From positions 1 to 9,371 of IMG/VR virus record IMGVR_UViG_3300017593_000278: DNA of 9,371 nucleotides. The stretch is one strand, 5' to 3'. Each line of letters begins with the position of its first letter. Position 1 is the first letter of the stretch. Under the pieces are notes generated by a model. It saw only the letters and a list, made by a program, of their open reading frames with translations, did no database searches and was not told the origin of the DNA. Positions 1,933 to 8,879 of the stretch are shown here, piece after piece. Made by a program: the position numbers and the translations under genes.

Positions 1933-3123
1933 TCAAGCCTTAACAATATCTCTAATCTTTGCCTGAACTCTTAGGTTTCTTGCTACTACTTCTCCAAAGA
2001 ATGTGTAGATACCTCTTGTGGTTGTCTTGTTGTTAACAAGTGGGTTATCAATCTCATAGTATCTAGGTGGTTCTGCAACAGATATAGCAAGTCTTGGATA
2101 TCCATTTCCTTCAGGGTCTGATGTATCAAGTATATATAGCCTGTTTAGACCATTGCTAGAACTTCTATCAACAGGTGTATCTACTGCAGTTATGATAGGT
2201 ATTCCGAATATAGACATCACTTTCATTCCAACGTCAACACCCTCAGGTGTCTGTACACCGTTAACACTACCTCTTGCATATCTCATCTCAGTCTTTGCAT
2301 ATCTTGTAAGTGTCTCGTACATGCTAAGTAGGTATGCATATGTCTTTGCACCAGTAAGCATAACATTTGGTCTTCCCCCTCTTTCCCAAACTTCAGCAAG
2401 AGCATCAAGTATTAAATCTGTAGTAAGTGCCTGTCCACCTGATTCGGATGAATATTTAACAACTGAATCGTATATACTATCTGCACTTCTATCAACTCCG
2501 TAAACATCTTCTCTACCTGCAACCTGTAGTGCTGATGCCTCTGCAGAGCTTGAAACTATTCTGTCTAGTGGAAGTATGTAGTTTGTGGTTGTTGATGGGT
2601 CTTCACAATCTGAACCATCTGTAAAGTTCTCACCGAAATATTTTCTCATTATCATCATGTTTATTAGCTTTACAAAATTCTGGGCATACTCTTTCCTAAG
2701 TCTGTCAACTGTAACGACTGCATCATCTTTACTCCTACTCTTTAATAGCATTTTCTTACTAATTTCAAACGGAAGTGCCGCCTTTTTAATATCTGCTTCC
2801 ATTCTAGCATACTCTGGAAGTACTGCAGATGGAAGAGTATCACCTTCGCCAAACACAATGTTCGCATACGTAGTTGGTAAAGCTACTTCAACTCTCCAAC
2901 CACTTCTTGGAAAATCTGTTTTTGGTAACATACCAAAAGCATTTGCTTCTTTATTGAGTAAAGACCACACTAGCATACCATAAGTCTTGTTTAGATAATC
3001 AGCACCAAGTGTAGTTTGTATTGCACCTGTACCCTTTGTTATTCCTTCAACATCCCAAAATACACCACTCTCTCCTTCAAGATACCACTTTTTTAGCTCA
3101 GCTAAACTCAATATTCTATACAT
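1933..3123 (-). CDS. Major capsid protein (HK97 fold), ~396 aa
   Basis: Size and position follow protease and scaffold. The N-terminal YGMLVWSLLNKEANAFGMLPKTDFPRSGWRV resembles, from memory, MCPs of archaeal tailed viruses (halovirus/magrovirus type). It also has FGIPII and a C-terminal GEVVARNLRVQAKIRDI. GAGGTGA (3129-3135) supports ATG 3123. Confidence 0.88.
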   Translation of the reverse strand: MYRILSLAELKKWYLEGESGVFWDVEGITKGTGAIQTTLGADYLNKTYGMLVWSLLNKEANAFGMLPKTDFPRSGWRVEVALPTTYANIVFGEGDTLPSAVLPEYARMEADIKKAALPFEISKKMLLKSRSKDDAVVTVDRLRKEYAQNFVKLINMMIMRKYFGENFTDGSDCEDPSTTTNYILPLDRIVSSSAEASALQVAGREDVYGVDRSADSIYDSVVKYSSESGGQALTTDLILDALAEVWERGGRPNVMLTGAKTYAYLLSMYETLTRYAKTEMRYARGSVNGVQTPEGVDVGMKVMSIFGIPIITAVDTPVDRSSSNGLNRLYILDTSDPEGNGYPRLAISVAEPPRYYEIDNPLVNNKTTTRGIYTFFGEVVARNLRVQAKIRDIVKA

Positions 3124-3128
3124 TTCTT

Positions 3129-3626
3129 TCACCTCTTAAGTAATTCAAACACCTTATCAGGATTTCCTCTACCGTCCAAAATCTCAAAAATCTCATCGTC
3201 TATACCTTTTTCGATATCAATCGCATCAACAACTGGAGTCTCTGAAACATCATCAAATTCCTCTTTTTCTTCAGTTTCGCCCTTTTTAACTTCTTCATCT
3301 TTGGCTTCCTCTTTAACTTCCTCTTCAGCTTTCTTTTCGACTTCCGCTTTCTCAATTGTTTCCTCTGCTTCCTTATCAGTTACCTCTTCGGTAACTTCAT
3401 TGGTATTGTCTTCAGCTTTCTCAACTTTATCTTCCTCAACTTTCTCCTCAATCTTTTCTTCAACATCTGTTTTAATCCCTTTCTTAATCTCGTCGAAATT
3501 ATCAATCATAACAGATATTAATCCTTTCTGAACTTCGACCAACTTATCTATAACATCCTCTATATCTTGTAGTTTTTTCTCAATTTCCTTTAATTTTTCC
3601 TCAACAATCTCAAAATTTTCACCCAT
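3129..3626 (-). CDS. Acidic coiled-coil capsid scaffolding protein, ~165 aa
   Basis: Extremely E/K/D-rich with an N-terminal heptad pattern (VEEKLKEIEKKLQDIEDVIDKL). It sits immediately upstream of the MCP. GAGGTG (3634-3639) supports ATG 3626. Confidence 0.7.
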   Translation of the reverse strand: MGENFEIVEEKLKEIEKKLQDIEDVIDKLVEVQKGLISVMIDNFDEIKKGIKTDVEEKIEEKVEEDKVEKAEDNTNEVTEEVTDKEAEETIEKAEVEKKAEEEVKEEAKDEEVKKGETEEKEEFDDVSETPVVDAIDIEKGIDDEIFEILDGRGNPDKVFELLKR

Positions 3627-3637
3627 TCCCAAACACC

Positions 3638-3874
3638 TCAATTCTTTTTCTTATCCCGTTCATTCAACCAAACTTGTTTTCTTCGTCTTGCTCCAACTGT
3701 TCTGGGGTCATCAGGCTCAGATTCAGATGGACGTTTCGTTTTCATTTGATGATAAAATATCCACCCACATAATCTCCGAGCCGTATCTTCATCAACACCA
3801 TTCTCATTCATCACACGTTCAACACAATGGTAAAACCATTTCTTTGGTGGTCTCAAATCATTTGCTTTCATCAC
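3638..3874 (-). CDS. Small basic protein with a CV-x17-C helical module (head-associated, unknown function)
   Basis: The ORF fills the gap between protease and scaffold. WFYHCVERVMNENGVDEDTARRLCGWI resembles the protease C-terminal segment. The start could be GTG 3874 or ATG 3871. Confidence 0.7.
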   Translation of the reverse strand: MMKANDLRPPKKWFYHCVERVMNENGVDEDTARRLCGWIFYHQMKTKRPSESEPDDPRTVGARRRKQVWLNERDKKKN

Positions 3875-5120
3875 CCTCTCTACGAAATTTACCTTTTACC
3901 ATTTCCTTTGCTTTTTCAATTTCGTCAACAAAAATTTCTAGCTCAGTTAGAGATAATTCAATATCATCACCGAACATATCGACAACAAAATGATATTCAT
4001 CTCCTTTCTTAACATACCTCTTTATATATGCACATATACGTTTAGCACTTTCCAAACTCTTACCAGTTGCCATCATGTATCTAACACAACCACAAAATCT
4101 TGACTTGGTATCAGGGTCATCTGGACATGACATTTCTTTAAAATGGCTACCTTCCATATACTTCTCTTTATCCACTTTAGCTTTGATAAGATTTACAAGC
4201 TCTTCTACCTTTTCTTTCAATCCAATAGTATCAACACGTTTCTCGCCAACCGCTTCGTATACACTATCAACAGCATCTGGAGAATTGTTTATTTCAATAG
4301 TTGTATCAATTCCCTCATCATCCTTTTTAATATCTTCCATTTTATTTTCTTCTCCCAACGATACCACCACCAACAAAGATTTCATAACATCTAACAATAC
4401 ATCTACTTTAACATCATTTGACGCACCACTATGTAATATGTTATGCACTACACCTTTATAAATATCCACTATTCTCGATACTTCTTCATCTTCACTCACC
4501 GCATTTAGACGAGTATTGAAAATTTCAAGCATATCACCAAAATCAAGACTCTTTAAAATACTTTCATAATCTAGTTCAATTTGTCCTTTAGCCAAAGAAA
4601 CTTCTTCTATTTTAGCATAAGGATTTCTAGGACTACCAACAATGCTAATTTCACTAATTTCAATTTGCTCAAATTCTCTAATAACAACATCATCTTTTAA
4701 AACATCCTTTGATTTTCCTTTCCCACCAATCGAAAATGCTGTAAGTTTGCCCTCTTTAATTGCATTCCAAACCGCATTATCTGTAGCATAATCATCGAAT
4801 ATTTGTGCAACAATATATACACCCCATTTACTTGTATCTGGATGTTTCATTATTTCCCACTGCACAATTTTACCAACCTTAACAATAGAATGTGCAAAAT
4901 GAACATCCCCACCACGCTTCATGTATTTAATCATTGCAGACTTCAATACACTAATTGGTAAAATATCATTATCTTTATCAACAACTTCAACACTAGCCCA
5001 ACCACTAACAAGTCTATCCGATTCATTAGTAACAGTTATTTTCATAGATTCTGTAACATATTTATTCGCATCAATGACATCACCATTATCAATTTCTTGT
5101 TTAATAATATCTTCACTCAT
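3858..5120 (-). CDS. Prohead maturation serine protease (HK97 gp4/XkdF-like) with a long C-terminal extension
   Basis: RLVSGWASVEVVDKDNDI, a candidate catalytic His (FAHS..VGKI), VWNAIKEGKLTAFSIGG (catalytic Ser motif) and ISEISIVGSPRNPYA. GAGGTGA (5126-5132) supports ATG 5120. Confidence 0.9.
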   Translation of the reverse strand: MSEDIIKQEIDNGDVIDANKYVTESMKITVTNESDRLVSGWASVEVVDKDNDILPISVLKSAMIKYMKRGGDVHFAHSIVKVGKIVQWEIMKHPDTSKWGVYIVAQIFDDYATDNAVWNAIKEGKLTAFSIGGKGKSKDVLKDDVVIREFEQIEISEISIVGSPRNPYAKIEEVSLAKGQIELDYESILKSLDFGDMLEIFNTRLNAVSEDEEVSRIVDIYKGVVHNILHSGASNDVKVDVLLDVMKSLLVVVSLGEENKMEDIKKDDEGIDTTIEINNSPDAVDSVYEAVGEKRVDTIGLKEKVEELVNLIKAKVDKEKYMEGSHFKEMSCPDDPDTKSRFCGCVRYMMATGKSLESAKRICAYIKRYVKKGDEYHFVVDMFGDDIELSLTELEIFVDEIEKAKEMVKGKFRREGDESK

Positions 5121-5125
5121 AATAT

Positions 5126-5716
5126 TCACCTCTTTCTAACACCTCTAACAACACATCTACACCGTGGATGAACCGTATATTCCCTACTTTTACCCCCACC
5201 GATACTAGCTATGTACTCCCGTAACATTTCAATTTCAACACCACCCTTTGTAAGCTCTGCAACTCTCCTACATTTCTCACATACTTTATCATCTTTTTTA
5301 TTAACAAACTCAAATTTGTTAATACCCAATCTCTCTTGATAATACATAACTCTAACACTATTTGCTAAATTACTTAATTCAGTCATCGCTATTGTCTCTG
5401 CCTTATCTCTATCCAATCCAATATTTACCAATTCTTCAATAACTTTACCTTTCCTAACAAACCATCCATTGACGAATGAATGTACCAAAACTTCATTAAC
5501 TTTTTTAGCTACCTCTTCATCTAAATCGGTATAAAACTTCCACCTATCAACTTTAAATAATGCCCATTCTCGCATTCCTTTTGTAACTTTTGTAATATAA
5601 TATGTTCTACCTTTTTCCAATATATCCAAATCATCATCATCTAATACAGTAGTAAACCACGAATATCCACCAATTAATGACTTCCGCACAAAATTTCTTA
5701 TGTTATCAATAATCAC
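5126..5716 (-). CDS. Mu gpF / SPP1 gp7-like minor head morphogenesis protein
   Basis: AETIAMTELSN, DDKVCEKC and C-terminal HPRCRC are hallmark motifs. It lies between portal and protease. The GTG start overlaps the portal TGA, with GGAGGT upstream. Confidence 0.88.
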   Translation of the reverse strand: MIIDNIRNFVRKSLIGGYSWFTTVLDDDDLDILEKGRTYYITKVTKGMREWALFKVDRWKFYTDLDEEVAKKVNEVLVHSFVNGWFVRKGKVIEELVNIGLDRDKAETIAMTELSNLANSVRVMYYQERLGINKFEFVNKKDDKVCEKCRRVAELTKGGVEIEMLREYIASIGGGKSREYTVHPRCRCVVRGVRKR

Positions 5717-7371
5717 GCCCCTTCAACCTCCTTATCTGACGCATCTCTACGCTTTCTCCTAACTATCTGTGGTTGTCCTTGATATCTGTCAGCTGTACCA
5801 CTTGACATTCTACCTCTTTCGGGTTCTCCTTGAAATCTATCCTCTGGTTTATTCATATTAATCTTATTATCTTCTTGTTTTGTTGTCTTTTCTTCAGATT
5901 TAACAAATTTGAAATCTATACCGTCTTCACCCTCAAACATTATAGCATCATAACCAAGTGTTTTCATTGCCTGAGCTTTCTGTATTCTTAACATCTCCCT
6001 CTCAATCTTTGCCTTCATATCTTTCTCTTCATGGTGAACCAACTTAATCTCCCAATCTTCAATCTCCAACTGTTTAGCAATCCATTTCAATATTCCTTCG
6101 TTCAATCTATATTGCTCCCTATCCAATACCCTATTTGTAACAGTTATCTGAAGTCCCTCATTAGCCAAACCAACCCCAGTTGAATAATCAGCTTGGAATA
6201 ATGGCATTACACCAAAGGTAGCACCAATACTTCTTCTTAATTCATTTCTATATTCAATGAAATTGATATCATCAGCCCTATAACTCATATCTATAAATTC
6301 CGCTGGTCTCGTGCTTTTCATCAAATTAGGATTATCAATCGCAAACGGTATTAAGCTATATGGGTTCTTTGCTCTCTCCTCTTCAATACGTTTCCACATC
6401 TTGTAAACTTTAGCTGGATTTCCTCGTATTATCAGTAAACCAGCTGGTGGTCTTCTCAAAGAGTAACTATATAATACATATTCATCCATTTTCATCAAAA
6501 TCATAACCTTTTGCCACACAGACATTAACAACGGTGTACCATATCCCACACTATGCTCACTCTTTGTATCAAAATATACTTCATCCCCAGAATAATATAC
6601 TATAATATTACTATTAAGCTTCGCTCTGAAATGAGCCTCAAACATCTCAGTGCCACAAATTGGACATTTAATATTCCCTTTCTCATAATCATCTGGTTTA
6701 ACAGTTATAAGTTTATTCCTGTGTTTTGGACAAACCATCAAATAATTCCCATTATCATCTCTACCATAAGAACCAAATCTATTCATAATTATTTGCATCA
6801 CAAACGGTGAACCCCTAATAATCTCTTTGATTTCACTTTTTACAACTTTACCATTTTTAAAATAATATTTCTTATGAGCAACAACAAAAGCATTATCATA
6901 AACATTTAAATCGACTGCAAACCCATATAACAAATCGAGTAACTTCTGTTTGTTTTCATTTATATTACCCATCCACTCCATTAATTTATTATACTCATTT
7001 TCATCAGGTTCTACTATATTTGTAGAACCACATTTCTCACATTTATCAACACGCTCTTCATATACAGCTCCACAATCCTCACACTTACTAGCAAATTTAG
7101 GTTTTAAATATATACCATTTTTAATTGTCTCATCAACAATACTCCTAATTATTGTTTTAACAACATCACTATTATTAAATAAATATCTCGCTATTTTTAA
7201 TGTTGTCAAATTTGGCTCTCTAAACGACTGGTCATATGGAATAATCTTTTTAAAATCATCCAATACTGGTCTAGGATTCATTCCACCATATATCGCAAAA
7301 TACTCATCATCACTTGATACATTATCCCCTTTTGTGAACAGTTTATCTTTAATATATTCAATAATACCCAT
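5713..7371 (-). CDS. Portal protein with two zinc-ribbon insertions, ~552 aa
   Basis: Portal-like segments DLNVYDNAFV, GYGTPLLMS and FIEYRNELRRSIGATFGVMP. It is the first gene of the portal-gpF-protease-MCP order. Inserts are CEDC..CEKC and CPKH..CPIC. GAGGTGA (7377-7383) supports ATG 7371. Confidence 0.88.
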   Translation of the reverse strand: MGIIEYIKDKLFTKGDNVSSDDEYFAIYGGMNPRPVLDDFKKIIPYDQSFREPNLTTLKIARYLFNNSDVVKTIIRSIVDETIKNGIYLKPKFASKCEDCGAVYEERVDKCEKCGSTNIVEPDENEYNKLMEWMGNINENKQKLLDLLYGFAVDLNVYDNAFVVAHKKYYFKNGKVVKSEIKEIIRGSPFVMQIIMNRFGSYGRDDNGNYLMVCPKHRNKLITVKPDDYEKGNIKCPICGTEMFEAHFRAKLNSNIIVYYSGDEVYFDTKSEHSVGYGTPLLMSVWQKVMILMKMDEYVLYSYSLRRPPAGLLIIRGNPAKVYKMWKRIEEERAKNPYSLIPFAIDNPNLMKSTRPAEFIDMSYRADDINFIEYRNELRRSIGATFGVMPLFQADYSTGVGLANEGLQITVTNRVLDREQYRLNEGILKWIAKQLEIEDWEIKLVHHEEKDMKAKIEREMLRIQKAQAMKTLGYDAIMFEGEDGIDFKFVKSEEKTTKQEDNKINMNKPEDRFQGEPERGRMSSGTADRYQGQPQIVRRKRRDASDKEVEGA

Positions 7372-7376
7372 CAATA

Positions 7377-7706
7377 TCACCTCGTTTTATCATACCTATC
7401 AAATATTTTTTCATACTTATCCCGAATCCTAAAATACTCTTTCATAAATTCCTCATCATGACTTTTCCAATTTTCATACCCACGTTCTCTAAGATTGTAA
7501 TGAGCCATTTCATGCATGATAATTTCAAATAATCCCCATCTAGCTAATGCCGTTTGTCCACCCTTAATATATAAAATATTATGCCCCTTAACAGTACGGG
7601 GCATGAAACCTGCTCTAGGATATTTAACTCTATCATTACTATGAACAATTTCTATTTTCCATCCCAACTGTTTTAATATTTTCCTGATTTCACTAATAAT
7701 ATTCAT
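7377..7706 (-). CDS. Small zincin metalloprotease (SprT/WLM/YgjP-like), 109 aa
   Basis: IIMHEMAH (HExxH) is followed by SHDEEF, which supplies the third His ligand as in SprT/YgjP-like minigluzincins. Confidence 0.8.
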   Translation of the reverse strand: MNIISEIRKILKQLGWKIEIVHSNDRVKYPRAGFMPRTVKGHNILYIKGGQTALARWGLFEIIMHEMAHYNLRERGYENWKSHDEEFMKEYFRIRDKYEKIFDRYDKTR

Positions 7707-7707
7707 T

Positions 7708-8490
7708 TTAACCTACCTCAATATCATGTGCCCACAACATCTTATTACTACGAGATACACCAAACATCCAAAACTTTGTTTGAGATTTTAAGCCCATTTT
7801 CGCAACATAATCATCATCAGACACCATTGTACCATTAATAAGAATCGTAATATTATTCCAATCCAAACGACTAAACGTATGGAAATGCCCCAATAAAACA
7901 ACATCGAACTGCTCATCTATGCCACCACTATACCAACGCATTGCTTTCTGAATAATACCGTAGAGAGGTATGTTTTGATACATATAAACTTGGTCGCCAT
8001 GAATTAATAAATACTTCCAACCTCTTATACTTGCTATATGATACCAATCTCCAACATGTACATCAACTTGATTATTGTGCCTATATATATCTCTTAACCT
8101 TTTATACAACATAAGTTCCCAATTCGTAATACCCTTTCTATTCGCTCTACCATGATTCCCATAAACACAATGAATATCAACTTTCCTATACCTGTCCAAC
8201 AGACCTTCAGTAAACCAATCAAAAGTATCAACGAAAACATCAATTGCCTCATCTACATTCAAATCAGTATTGTACCCTTGCCCACCATATATAGCTTCAC
8301 CATCTATCATATCACCAAGTAAGAATATGTGAATATCAGGCATTTTATAAGCCTTATTAATTTCATTCTTAAAATCTAAAACACTCCTCAATAATTTACC
8401 CATACGCTGTCTAAACACATCCACATTATATGATTTAGTTTTCTTACCAACATGCGTATCACTAATAACAACAACGGTACTTATCTCCAT
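7708..8490 (-). CDS. Calcineurin-like metallophosphoesterase, ~260 aa
   Basis: All five motifs are present: SDTH, GDMIDG, GNHG, HGD, GHFH. Start moved to ATG 8490, which overlaps the upstream TAA (TAATG) and has GGTGG upstream. Confidence 0.9.
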   Translation of the reverse strand: MEISTVVVISDTHVGKKTKSYNVDVFRQRMGKLLRSVLDFKNEINKAYKMPDIHIFLLGDMIDGEAIYGGQGYNTDLNVDEAIDVFVDTFDWFTEGLLDRYRKVDIHCVYGNHGRANRKGITNWELMLYKRLRDIYRHNNQVDVHVGDWYHIASIRGWKYLLIHGDQVYMYQNIPLYGIIQKAMRWYSGGIDEQFDVVLLGHFHTFSRLDWNNITILINGTMVSDDDYVAKMGLKSQTKFWMFGVSRSNKMLWAHDIEVG

Positions 8491-8879
8491 TATCCACCAC
8501 CAACCATATATACAAAATAATAGACGATTAAAATAATCGTCAACACTATACTCCAATATCTCAATATTTTATCCTGAAGTTTATCGCTATATGACTGCTC
8601 ACGCTCAATATTATCTAGTTTATTTTTCAATAACATTATATCATTATTGTGCTCCAGTTTTGTTACAAATCGTTCCGAATAATTATTATATTTCACAAAC
8701 TTGCGTTCAACCACTTTATCCAAATCATGTTGTTCATCGACCATTTCTTTTACAAGTGTTGATAATTCTTTAATATCTTCTCTTATATTACCAATAGCTT
8801 CCTTGATTTCTCCCCGAAATCGTTCAAAATCACGTTCAAGTTTCAGCACACGTTCATCAATATCAGGCATGTTCATCAT
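8490..8879 (-). CDS. Coiled-coil protein with a single C-terminal transmembrane helix (holin/XhlA-like architecture)
   Basis: Heptad-rich charged N-terminus (IDERVLKLERDFERF...) and a hydrophobic tail WSIVLTIILIVYYFVYMV. Function is inferred. Confidence 0.65.
   Translation of the reverse strand: MMNMPDIDERVLKLERDFERFRGEIKEAIGNIREDIKELSTLVKEMVDEQHDLDKVVERKFVKYNNYSERFVTKLEHNNDIMLLKNKLDNIEREQSYSDKLQDKILRYWSIVLTIILIVYYFVYMVGGG

What the first reader, a model, noticed from the sequence alone, without database searches (positions are those of the whole stretch)
1933..7371. Recurrent hydrophobic-x-K-[G/A/S] motif in head proteins: candidate prohead protease cleavage site
Seen: MCP ITKG about 30 residues from its N-terminus. 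Scaffold IKKG, VEKA, IEKA, VKKG, IEKG. Protease LAKG (right after the catalytic domain), ILKS, IYKG, VMKS, LIKA, VKKG, IEKA, MVKG. gpF VRKS, LEKG, VTKG. Portal FTKG near the N-terminus and FVKS just before the charged C-terminal tail. Known: prohead proteases cut scaffold, MCP propeptide, portal and themselves at short shared motifs. Inference: cleavage after Lys would shred the scaffold, release the protease domain and give a mature MCP starting GTGAIQT.
Basis: partly seen in the sequence, partly recalled or inferred. Interest (0 to 1): 0.6.

Follow-up and report, generated by a model that had tools for sequence, protein, structure and literature searches.

The report
Lysine cleavage motif of a prohead protease
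In the head genes of an archaeal tailed virus from hydrothermal vents, the short motif hydrophobic-x-Lys-small is far more frequent than chance. It is very probably where the virus's HK97-type capsid protease cuts, which makes this a new example of a known mechanism rather than a new one.

Summary
[ILVFM]xK[GAS] occurs 29 times in the five head proteins, against 8.0±2.7 in shuffles. Non-head proteins sit at background.

The excess is carried by the scaffold (6 vs 0.7), the C-terminal half of the protease (9 vs 2.6) and gpF (5 vs 0.9). It recurs in the scaffolds and proteases of relatives with about 40% identity. An unbiased scan of 999 patterns ranks it second.

Two sites are deeply conserved:
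- **MCP site (ITK|G).** It lies in a predicted disordered linker. Lys is present in 60 of 62 homologues in the aligned column, and one column away in the other two. The P3 residue is I, V, F or L in all 60.
- **Protease boundary site (LAK|G).** It sits directly after the catalytic domain, at the start of a disordered linker. It is near-invariant in about 150 protease clusters and in phage T5 (LAKS).

The motif matches the experimentally known HK97 site (FNK|S). It agrees at P1 and P1' with the T5 site (HLK|A). The HK97 and T5 propeptides are also enriched in it.

The cleavage-site reading is therefore well supported, but no experiment shows it. The portal C-terminal site and the gpF sites are not conserved. 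I rate this a new member of a known kind, of moderate interest.

The parts
1933..3123 (-). Major capsid protein, HK97 fold. 396 aa from the ATG at 3123; the ORF as listed runs to 3132.
   Evidence: Pfam SU10_MCP and phrog_24667. 64 homologues. AF2 model with pLDDT 81 matches HK97-fold capsids.
3031..3042 (-). ITKG, the predicted MCP maturation site. The cut after K33 (K30 from the ATG) removes a propeptide of about 30 residues and leaves a mature N-terminus beginning GTGAIQT.
   Evidence: Lys is in the aligned column in 60/62 homologues; P3 is I/V/F/L in 60/60; P1' is A31, T8, S7, G6. The site lies in segment 24-40, which has pLDDT below 50, after helix 7-16. It aligns with MSKA100 of the HVTV-1 MCP.
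3129..3641 (-). Acidic scaffolding protein (170 aa as listed; possibly starts at the ATG at 3626). It carries six motif copies: VQKG 3522-3533, IKKG 3477-3488, VEKA 3414-3425, IEKA 3345-3356, VKKG 3279-3290 and IEKG 3204-3215.
   Evidence: 6 observed vs 0.66 expected. The predicted fragments are 39, 15, 21, 23, 22, 25 and 25 aa. Four of the eight Gly residues in the protein are the G of a motif copy. IEKG143, 25 aa from the C-terminus, aligns with a motif copy in three of five relatives (L002, L004, L005).
3638..3874 (-). Small 78-aa protein with a Cys-containing helical domain that is a paralogue of the protease C-terminal domain. It is a separate gene here, with a Shine-Dalgarno-like GAGGGTGATG and a 17-nt overlap with the protease gene.
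   Evidence: BLASTP against protease residues 300-420 gives E 2e-4. The same domain is fused into the protease in L005 and L009.
3858..5120 (-). Prohead protease, 420 aa from the ATG. It has an S78 catalytic domain (about residues 30-175) and a 240-aa C-terminal extension that is helical and scaffold-like and ends in a Cys domain.
   Evidence: Pfam PF04586. It aligns with HK97 gp4 across His65 and Ser114. H77 and S130 are invariant in alignment A2.
4584..4595 (-). LAKG, the predicted autoprocessing ('release') site directly after the catalytic domain.
   Evidence: phi-A-K-[G/S] is present in 7/7 relatives and near-invariant in about 150 of 159 protease representatives. A177 and K178 are at least 90% conserved. 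The site lies at the start of the linker 177-186, which has pLDDT below 50. T5 pb11 has LAKS at the same place.
3891..4559 (-). Seven further motif copies in the protease C-terminal extension: ILKS 4548-4559, IYKG 4452-4463, VMKS 4377-4388, LIKA 4179-4190, VKKG 4002-4013, IEKA 3909-3920 and MVKG 3891-3902.
   Evidence: Of the eight sites after the catalytic domain (LAKG plus these seven), seven are kept as the motif in L002, against 58% identity elsewhere in the extension. In 145 representatives the extensions hold 509 copies against 249±15 expected.
5126..5716 (-). Mu F-like minor head protein with five motif copies: VRKS 5678-5689, LEKG 5609-5620, VTKG 5576-5587, VRKG 5447-5458 and LTKG 5243-5254.
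   Evidence: 5 observed vs 0.9 expected, p about 5e-4. The positions are not conserved in L007 or L004, and L002 has no MuF gene at this position. Whether it is a substrate is uncertain.
5713..7371 (-). Portal protein with two zinc-ribbon-like inserts. It carries FTKG 7327-7338 near the N-terminus, FVKS 5896-5907 before the charged tail, and three internal copies.
   Evidence: phrog_18178. 5 observed vs 2.3 expected, not significant. The N-terminal phi-x-K-G is kept in L002 and L008 (three of five portals); FVKS is not conserved.

Best explanation
The window is the head-assembly module of an archaeal tailed virus from hydrothermal-vent metagenomes. Its prohead protease has an HK97 gp4-type (MEROPS S78) serine protease domain with the assemblin fold. 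That domain is fused to a long, scaffold-like C-terminal extension.

The protease most likely recognises hydrophobic(P3)-x(P2)-Lys(P1), followed by a small residue (P1': G, A or S, sometimes T), in exposed or unfolded segments. It cuts after the Lys.

Inside the assembled procapsid this would have four effects:
1. It removes an MCP propeptide of about 30 residues at ITK|G.
2. It separates the catalytic domain from its own C-terminal extension at LAK|G.
3. It cuts the extension and the separate scaffold into peptides of about 6-66 and 15-39 residues. These could leave the shell.
4. It detaches the last 25 residues of the scaffold, which by analogy with other scaffolds may be the shell-binding end.

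Shown here: the enrichment, its specificity for Lys and for scaffold and protease, the conservation of the two key sites, their position in predicted disordered linkers, and the match to the known HK97 site and, at P1 and P1', to the T5 site.

Inferred: that cleavage really occurs at these sites, which copies are used, and the order of events.
For: - **Window statistics.** 29 vs 8.0±2.75. The result survives block shuffles, and ten permuted-order controls give far fewer hits.
- **Relatives.** Proteases and scaffolds are enriched in L002, L004, L005, L007, L008 and L009. Non-head proteins have O/E of about 1.1.
- **Unbiased scan.** The motif ranks 2nd of 999 patterns in scaffold plus protease (58 vs 19.7, z 8.3, with L002 left out). 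It ranks 247th in non-head proteins.
- **Protease family.** In the C-terminal extensions of 145 representatives at 50% identity or less, there are 509 copies vs 249±15 (z about 17.6). phi-x-R-[GAS] gives 110 vs 109 and phi-x-E-[GAS] gives 249 vs 260. A and S at P1' are more enriched than G.
- **MCP site.** K is in the aligned column in 60/62 homologues and P3 is hydrophobic in 60/60. The segment has pLDDT below 50.
- **Boundary site.** It is near-invariant and lies in a low-confidence linker after a catalytic domain with pLDDT above 94.
- **HK97.** The known site K103/S104 (PMC10275583) reads FNK|S. The delta domain has 4 copies vs 0.75 expected, p 0.004.
- **T5.** The mature MCP chains in the PDB begin at residue 160, so the cut is HLK|A. 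The propeptide has 5 copies vs 0.98 and the mature part has none. The protease has LAKS after its catalytic domain.
- **HVTV-1.** This is the nearest isolate by MCP. All 4 motif copies of its MCP lie in the first 103 residues, and the last aligns with ITKG.
- **Fold.** The protease model matches T4 gp21 and herpesvirus assemblins. Those enzymes use P3-x-P1|small motifs of the same shape; A-X-E with Ser preferred at P1' is reported for SPN3US (PMC10052503).
Against: - There are no proteomic, N-terminal sequencing or biochemical data for this virus or its close relatives.
- In the AF2 model several copies lie inside or at the ends of predicted helices. Accessibility is therefore assumed, and a helix-end structural role is not excluded for some.
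- The motif also occurs in folded parts that are presumably not cut: protease VLKS61 (a conserved helix), MCP IKKA, LLKS and IVKA, and HK97 IIKG376. It cannot be sufficient on its own.
- P1' is variable in MCP homologues (T, V, E, D, Q).
- The T5 site has its hydrophobic residue at P2, not P3.
- In phage phi12 the two mapped sites share only a basic P1, and the authors suspect low sequence specificity (PMC8569155).
- The portal and gpF sites are mostly not conserved.
Confidence: 0.7

Rival explanations
1. The motif is a structural signature of the helical scaffold-like domains, such as helix ends capped by Lys and a small residue or a coiled-coil register. It has nothing to do with cleavage.
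For: In the AF2 model of the protease, five of the eight copies after the catalytic domain sit at or just after the ends of predicted helices. One copy (VLKS61) is a conserved helix inside the catalytic domain. phi-x-K followed by any residue is mildly over-represented in all protein classes, including non-head proteins.
Against: - Other proteins of the same viruses show no excess (O/E about 1.1).
- The Arg and Glu versions of the motif are exactly at expectation in the same domains.
- Ala and Ser, which are not helix breakers, are more enriched at P1' than Gly.
- The two best-conserved copies lie in predicted disordered linkers, not helices.
- The motif coincides with the mapped HK97 site, and at P1 and P1' with the T5 site.
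Confidence: 0.13
2. The Lys motif marks another Lys-directed event, for example covalent cross-linking, Lys modification, or docking of the protease extension and scaffold onto the shell without cutting.
For: HK97 uses a Lys in capsid cross-linking (established knowledge). The motif is conserved, but its chemistry has not been tested here.
Against: The cross-linking Lys of HK97 lies in the mature shell domain, not in the propeptide or scaffold. Here the copies concentrate in the parts that are normally discarded. The aligned HK97 and T5 sites are cleavage sites.
Confidence: 0.05
3. The sites are cut, but by a host Lys-specific protease rather than the viral S78 enzyme. Staphylococcal phage 80alpha, for example, uses a host protease.
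For: Host proteases in phage maturation have a precedent (discussed in PMC8569155).
Against: The motif travels with the S78 protease across bacterial phages (HK97, T5) and archaeal viruses from very different hosts. Its best-conserved copy lies within the protease polypeptide itself.
Confidence: 0.05
4. Chance: a motif picked after the fact in Lys-rich proteins.
For: MCP and portal counts taken alone are only marginal.
Against: z is about 8 in the window. The motif ranks 2nd of 999 patterns in an unbiased scan of independent relatives. z is about 17.6 in 145 further proteases.
Confidence: 0.02

Closest known systems
Phage HK97 gp4 protease (MEROPS S78) acting on the gp5 delta domain
   Same: Same protease family: Pfam PF04586, with the catalytic His and Ser aligned. 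The known cut K103/S104 reads FNK|S, which fits the motif exactly. The delta domain is enriched in the motif, 4 vs 0.75. In both cases the cut lies in an unstructured stretch before the N-arm.
   Different: HK97 has no separate scaffold. Its scaffold is the 103-residue delta domain of the MCP, and its protease is short (225 aa). The window has a propeptide of only about 30 residues, a separate acidic scaffold, and a protease with a 240-residue extension. HK97 has AMKS rather than phi-A-K-[GS] after the catalytic domain.
Phage T5 pb11 protease acting on pb8
   Same: The mature pb8 starts at residue 160, after Lys159 and with Ala at P1'. The propeptide has 5 motif copies and the mature part none. 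pb11 carries LAKS directly after the catalytic domain, as the window carries LAKG.
   Different: T5 also uses a long MCP delta domain instead of a separate scaffold. At the mapped pb8 site the hydrophobic residue is at P2 (HLK|A). I could not check from the literature held here whether pb11 is cut at LAKS.
T4 gp21 and the giant-phage proteases (SPN3US gp245, phiKZ gp175)
   Same: Same assemblin fold; the best structural match of the model is T4 gp21, 5JBL. Same logic: a three-residue motif, with many copies in propeptides and scaffold-type proteins, and self-cleavage. A-X-E with Ser preferred at P1' is reported in PMC10052503.
   Different: P1 is Glu in those phages and Lys here. They belong to a different protease family (not S78) and have far more substrates.
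Herpesvirus assemblin with its release (R) and maturation (M) sites
   Same: The fold matches. The architecture also matches: a protease domain fused to a scaffold-like C-terminal part, with one site directly after the catalytic domain and one near the C-terminal end of the scaffold. In HSV-1 the M site lies 25 residues from the C-terminus (from my own knowledge); here IEKG lies 25 residues from the end of the scaffold.
   Different: The herpesvirus motif is (V/L/I)-x-Ala|Ser, with P1 Ala instead of Lys (from my own knowledge). The relationship is distant and visible only at fold level.
Haloarchaeal tailed viruses HVTV-1, HCTV-1 and HCTV-5 (Druskaviridae)
   Same: These are the nearest isolated viruses by MCP, at 29-30% identity. 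In HVTV-1 the aligned site is MSK|A, and all four motif copies of the MCP lie in the N-terminal 103 residues.
   Different: The MCP N-terminal extension is much longer (about 100 aa). The protease is 637 aa with an acidic tail. They are halophiles with genomes of about 100 kb. I could not retrieve the published N-terminal sequence data.

Membership tests
Peptidase S78 (HK97 gp4-type prohead serine protease) | Sequence match to the family profile above the curated threshold | tested here: met
   PF04586 scores 36 bits against a cut-off of 21. PHROGs head maturation protease families also match.
Peptidase S78 (HK97 gp4-type prohead serine protease) | Catalytic His and Ser conserved | tested here: met
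   BLASTP against HK97 gp4 aligns FAH with FNH (His65) and FSIGG with MSVGF (Ser114). H77 and S130 are invariant in 60 homologues. That these two are the catalytic residues is from my own knowledge.
Peptidase S78 (HK97 gp4-type prohead serine protease) | Assemblin (herpesvirus protease-like) fold | tested here: met
   The catalytic domain of the AF2 model has pLDDT above 94. The best PDB matches are T4 gp21 (5JBL) and the HCMV, EBV, PRV, HSV-2 and VZV proteases.
Peptidase S78 (HK97 gp4-type prohead serine protease) | Cuts the capsid protein precursor after Lys, as HK97 does at K103/S104 | not testable with these tools
   Only indirect evidence: the conserved phi-x-K in MCP homologues and the match to the HK97 and T5 sites.
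HK97-fold major capsid protein with a cleaved N-terminal propeptide | HK97 fold | tested here: met
   AF2 model with pLDDT 81. Foldseek matches many HK97-fold capsid proteins, HK97 itself included.
HK97-fold major capsid protein with a cleaved N-terminal propeptide | The N-terminal segment is removed on maturation | not testable with these tools
   Predicted only: helix 7-16, then a disordered linker that holds the conserved Lys.
Motif-directed multi-site scaffold and propeptide degradation (as for T4 gp21 or SPN3US gp245) | The same short motif recurs in scaffold, propeptides and the protease itself, and is rare elsewhere | tested here: met
Motif-directed multi-site scaffold and propeptide degradation (as for T4 gp21 or SPN3US gp245) | The fragments are produced and are absent from mature heads | not testable with these tools
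   No virions and no proteome are available.

The most novel reading that the evidence does not exclude
phi-x-Lys|small may be a general recognition code of a large S78 protease clade that spans bacterial phages (HK97, T5) and archaeal viruses. In that case the near-invariant phi-A-K-[G/S] directly after the catalytic domain would be a universal self-release site. It would be the functional counterpart of the herpesvirus R site, conserved since before the split of bacterial and archaeal tailed viruses. Mature capsid-protein N-termini and scaffold fates could then be predicted from sequence alone for many uncultured viruses.
Probability: 0.45. Interest if true: 0.55.

Novelty: new member of a known kind. 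Interest (0 to 1): 0.4.

Why it matters
It gives a concrete, testable prediction of capsid maturation for uncultured archaeal viruses from hydrothermal vents. It predicts the mature capsid-protein N-terminus, where the protease frees itself, and how the scaffold is removed.

It also suggests that the Lys specificity known from HK97 is shared widely in this protease family, and that motif counting can flag which head proteins are protease substrates. The mechanism itself, motif-directed proteolytic maturation of HK97-type procapsids, is well established. The gain is in annotation and in evolutionary reach, not in a new principle.

Tried and rejected
- **IMG/VR scan.** A scan of IMG/VR for relatives of the MCP found nothing. 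Relatives came from the protein database and their contigs instead.
- **Own genome.** The held genome is only the window itself, so no same-genome background was available. I used non-head proteins of the window and of seven related contigs as the natural control.
- **Average residue preferences.** Preferences around all Lys residues are weak. The signal is in the joint motif, not in single positions.
- **Papers not held.** I tried to read the primary papers on HVTV-1 virion proteins and on T5 head-protein processing; none is held. The mature T5 N-terminus was instead taken from the sequence deposited with the PDB capsid structures.
- **Frameshift idea.** I considered a programmed frameshift joining the protease and the 78-aa ORF and rejected it. 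The ORF has its own Shine-Dalgarno-like sequence and ATG, with a 17-nt overlap.
- **Sequence search of the PDB.** A search with the protease profile gave only coiled-coil noise. The fold search was informative.
- **Portal and gpF as conserved substrates.** Not supported by alignment.

Full report
**What the window is**

All genes of the window lie on the minus strand. In order of transcription they are:
- a calcineurin-like phosphoesterase (7708-8556);
- a small ORF (7377-7706);
- the portal (5713-7380; phrog_18178, E 7e-40);
- a Mu F-like minor head protein (5126-5716);
- an S78 prohead protease (3858-5129; PF04586, 36 bits against a cut-off of 21);
- a 78-aa ORF (3638-3874);
- an acidic 170-aa protein without family matches, taken as the scaffold (3129-3641);
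- the major capsid protein (1933-3132; SU10_MCP and phrog_24667);
- a 104-aa ORF;
- a head-tail adaptor-like protein (944-1594).

The nearest isolated viruses by MCP are the haloarchaeal viruses HVTV-1, HCTV-1 and HCTV-5 (29-30% identity) and a Methanofastidiosa virus. Related metagenomic contigs carry the same head module next to an archaeal-type replication module: an AAA ATPase, the primase large subunit, family B polymerase, a Cas4-like nuclease and ERCC4. The DNA of the window occurs in hydrothermal-vent and sediment metagenomes. The held genome is only this contig.

Against residue shuffles of each protein, the five head proteins hold 29 copies of [ILVFM]xK[GAS] where 8.0±2.75 are expected. 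None of 5000 shuffles reached 29. Shuffling only within blocks of 10 to 50 residues keeps local composition and gives the same answer, z 7.8-8.1.

The excess comes from the scaffold (6 vs 0.66), the protease (9 vs 2.6) and gpF (5 vs 0.9). MCP (4 vs 1.5) and portal (5 vs 2.3) are marginal when taken alone. Non-head proteins of the window are at background (8 vs 5.2). phi-x-K-G is absent from them, while the head proteins have 14.

Ten other orderings of the same three residue classes give 4-16 hits in the head proteins. In 26,930 residues of non-head proteins all eleven orderings give 90-121.

**Was the motif picked after the fact?**

I fetched seven contigs of relatives whose MCPs are 76% (L002) or 35-41% identical.

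In every one with an annotated protease and scaffold, these two proteins carry more copies than expected. Examples are the L005 protease (13 vs 3.5) and the L009 scaffold (4 vs 1.0). Their non-head proteins have O/E between 0.6 and 1.36.

I then scanned 999 patterns of the form class-x-residue-class on scaffolds plus proteases, leaving out L002.
- The first-ranked pattern is a conserved Cys motif of a folded domain.

An exhaustive search with the protease gave 1760 family members, of which the best 150 were returned as representatives at 50% identity or less. For 145 of them I took the C-terminal extension after the catalytic domain, not counting the boundary site itself. These extensions hold 509 copies against 249±15 expected.

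The controls are flat:
- phi-x-R-[GAS]: 110 vs 109;
- phi-x-E-[GAS]: 249 vs 260;
- the motif without a hydrophobic P3: 810 vs 866.

Ser (189 vs 75) and Ala (194 vs 84) at P1' are more enriched than Gly (126 vs 89). The signal therefore needs Lys together with a hydrophobic P3 and a small P1'. It is not what a helix-capping glycine would give.

**Two deeply conserved copies**

*MCP site.* In 62 MCP homologues the N-terminal 30-40 residues are poorly conserved.
- The Lys of ITKG is in the aligned column in 60 of them, and one column away in the other two.
- The residue two before it is I, V, F or L in all 60.
- The residue after it is A (31), T (8), S (7), G (6) or other (8).
- In the AF2 model (pLDDT 81) the site lies in the only long low-confidence segment, residues 24-40. 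That segment sits between an N-terminal helix and the HK97-fold body.

*Protease boundary site.*
- In the proteases of all seven loci, phi-A-K-[G/S] follows the last strand of the catalytic domain.
- In the profile alignment of 159 representatives it is almost invariant. A177 and K178 are at least 90% conserved in alignment A2.
- The AF2 model of the protease has a confident catalytic domain (residues 30-175, pLDDT above 94). A linker with pLDDT below 50 follows at 177-186 and starts at this site.

*Other copies.* Of the eight copies after the catalytic domain, seven are kept as the motif in L002. Often the residues differ (I/V, S/A, M/F). Identity elsewhere in the extension is 58%. In the scaffolds the number of copies is kept (5-6 in the window and L002, 2-4 in the others) while their positions drift. 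The exception is the copy about 25 residues before the C-terminus, which aligns with a motif copy in three of five relatives (L002, L004, L005).

**Link to known cleavage sites**

*HK97.* The cleavage site is K103/S104 (PMC10275583). In the HK97 sequence this reads FNK|S, an exact instance of the motif. The 103-residue delta domain holds four copies against 0.75 expected, p 0.004.

*T5.* The MCP chains deposited with the mature T5 capsid structures correspond to residues 160-458. The cut is therefore K159|A160 (HLK|A).
- The T5 propeptide holds five copies against 0.98 expected.
- The mature part holds none.
- The T5 protease carries LAKS directly after its catalytic domain, like LAKG here.

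*HVTV-1.* All four copies of the MCP lie in the first 103 residues. The last, MSKA, aligns with ITKG.

*Fold.* The window's protease aligns with HK97 gp4 across the catalytic His and Ser. Its model is closest to T4 gp21 and the herpesvirus assemblins. Those enzymes use motifs of the same shape with another P1. For example, SPN3US uses A-X-E| with Ser preferred at P1', and has several motif copies in its propeptides (PMC10052503).

**Most likely mechanism**

The protease is built like a protease-scaffold fusion. After procapsid assembly it probably cuts after Lys in exposed phi-x-K-small segments. This would:
- remove the MCP propeptide of about 30 residues, leaving a mature N-terminus GTGAIQT;
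- free the catalytic domain at LAK|G;
- reduce its own extension to pieces of 6-66 residues;
- reduce the scaffold to pieces of 15-39 residues;
- detach the last 25 residues of the scaffold.

The parallel with the herpesvirus release and maturation sites rests on my own knowledge of that system. I give this about 0.7 overall. Confidence is higher for the MCP and boundary sites and lower for any other single copy.

**Limits**

- No direct evidence of cleavage exists for this virus or its close relatives.
- Some copies lie in predicted helices.
- Copies in folded domains (protease VLKS61; MCP IKKA, LLKS, IVKA; HK97 IIKG376) are presumably spared. Context must therefore matter.
- P1' is only a preference.
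- The T5 site has the hydrophobic residue at P2.
- For phage phi12 the two mapped sites share only a basic P1, and the authors suspect loose specificity (PMC8569155).
- The portal N-terminal copy is kept in three of five portals. The portal C-terminal copy and the gpF copies are not conserved. I treat these proteins as possible substrates, not established ones.

**Novelty**

Lys at P1 for the HK97 protease, and motif-rich propeptides for T4-like proteases, are both known. New here are:
- the extension to an uncultured group of archaeal viruses from vents;
- the motif definition with its controls;
- the finding that phi-A-K-[G/S] at the end of the catalytic domain is near-invariant across about 150 protease clusters and present in T5.

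In the papers I could search I found no statement of such a consensus, but several key papers are not held. I file the finding as a new member of a known kind.

No other genetic code was used.

Noticed in passing
window 3638-3874 (-) and protease residues about 335-370 (window about 4020-4125): The 78-aa ORF between protease and scaffold shares a Cys-containing helical motif (F..CV..M...G....A.R.C..I) with the confidently modelled C-terminal domain of the protease. BLASTP gives E 2e-4, and the domain has pLDDT 90-96. In L005 and L009 the same domain is fused into the protease. It has no Pfam family and its function is unknown. It may be a shell- or metal-binding module.
   Followed up: partly
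window 5713-7380 (-), portal residues about 97-122 and 215-244: The portal carries two CxxC...CxxC zinc-ribbon-like inserts. Pfam hits to zinc-ribbon families are weak. The first insert is conserved in all five aligned portals. This is unusual for portal proteins.
   Followed up: partly
L002 4705-8186 compared with window 3129-7380: The closest relative, L002 (MCP 76% identical), has neither the Mu F-like gene nor the 78-aa ORF between portal and scaffold. The head module is therefore mosaic even among close relatives.
   Followed up: no
L002 12635-15928: The family B DNA polymerase of the close relative carries an intein with a LAGLIDADG endonuclease domain (Pfam list).
   Followed up: no
whole window: Strong and uniform strand asymmetry: GC skew of -0.15 to -0.54 on the plus strand at 30-39% G+C. 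The coding strand is therefore purine-rich throughout.
   Followed up: no
protease catalytic domains of 148 representatives: phi-x-R-[GAS] is four times over-represented in the catalytic domains, 209 vs 50. This is explained by the nearly invariant M-x-R-G-G motif (R69, G70, G71). It is a fold element, not a cleavage signal.
   Followed up: yes
window 3123, 5120, 7371: The longest ORFs of MCP, protease and portal start at GTG, but an ATG follows three codons later. The database proteins identical to the window start at that ATG: 396 and 420 aa.
   Followed up: yes
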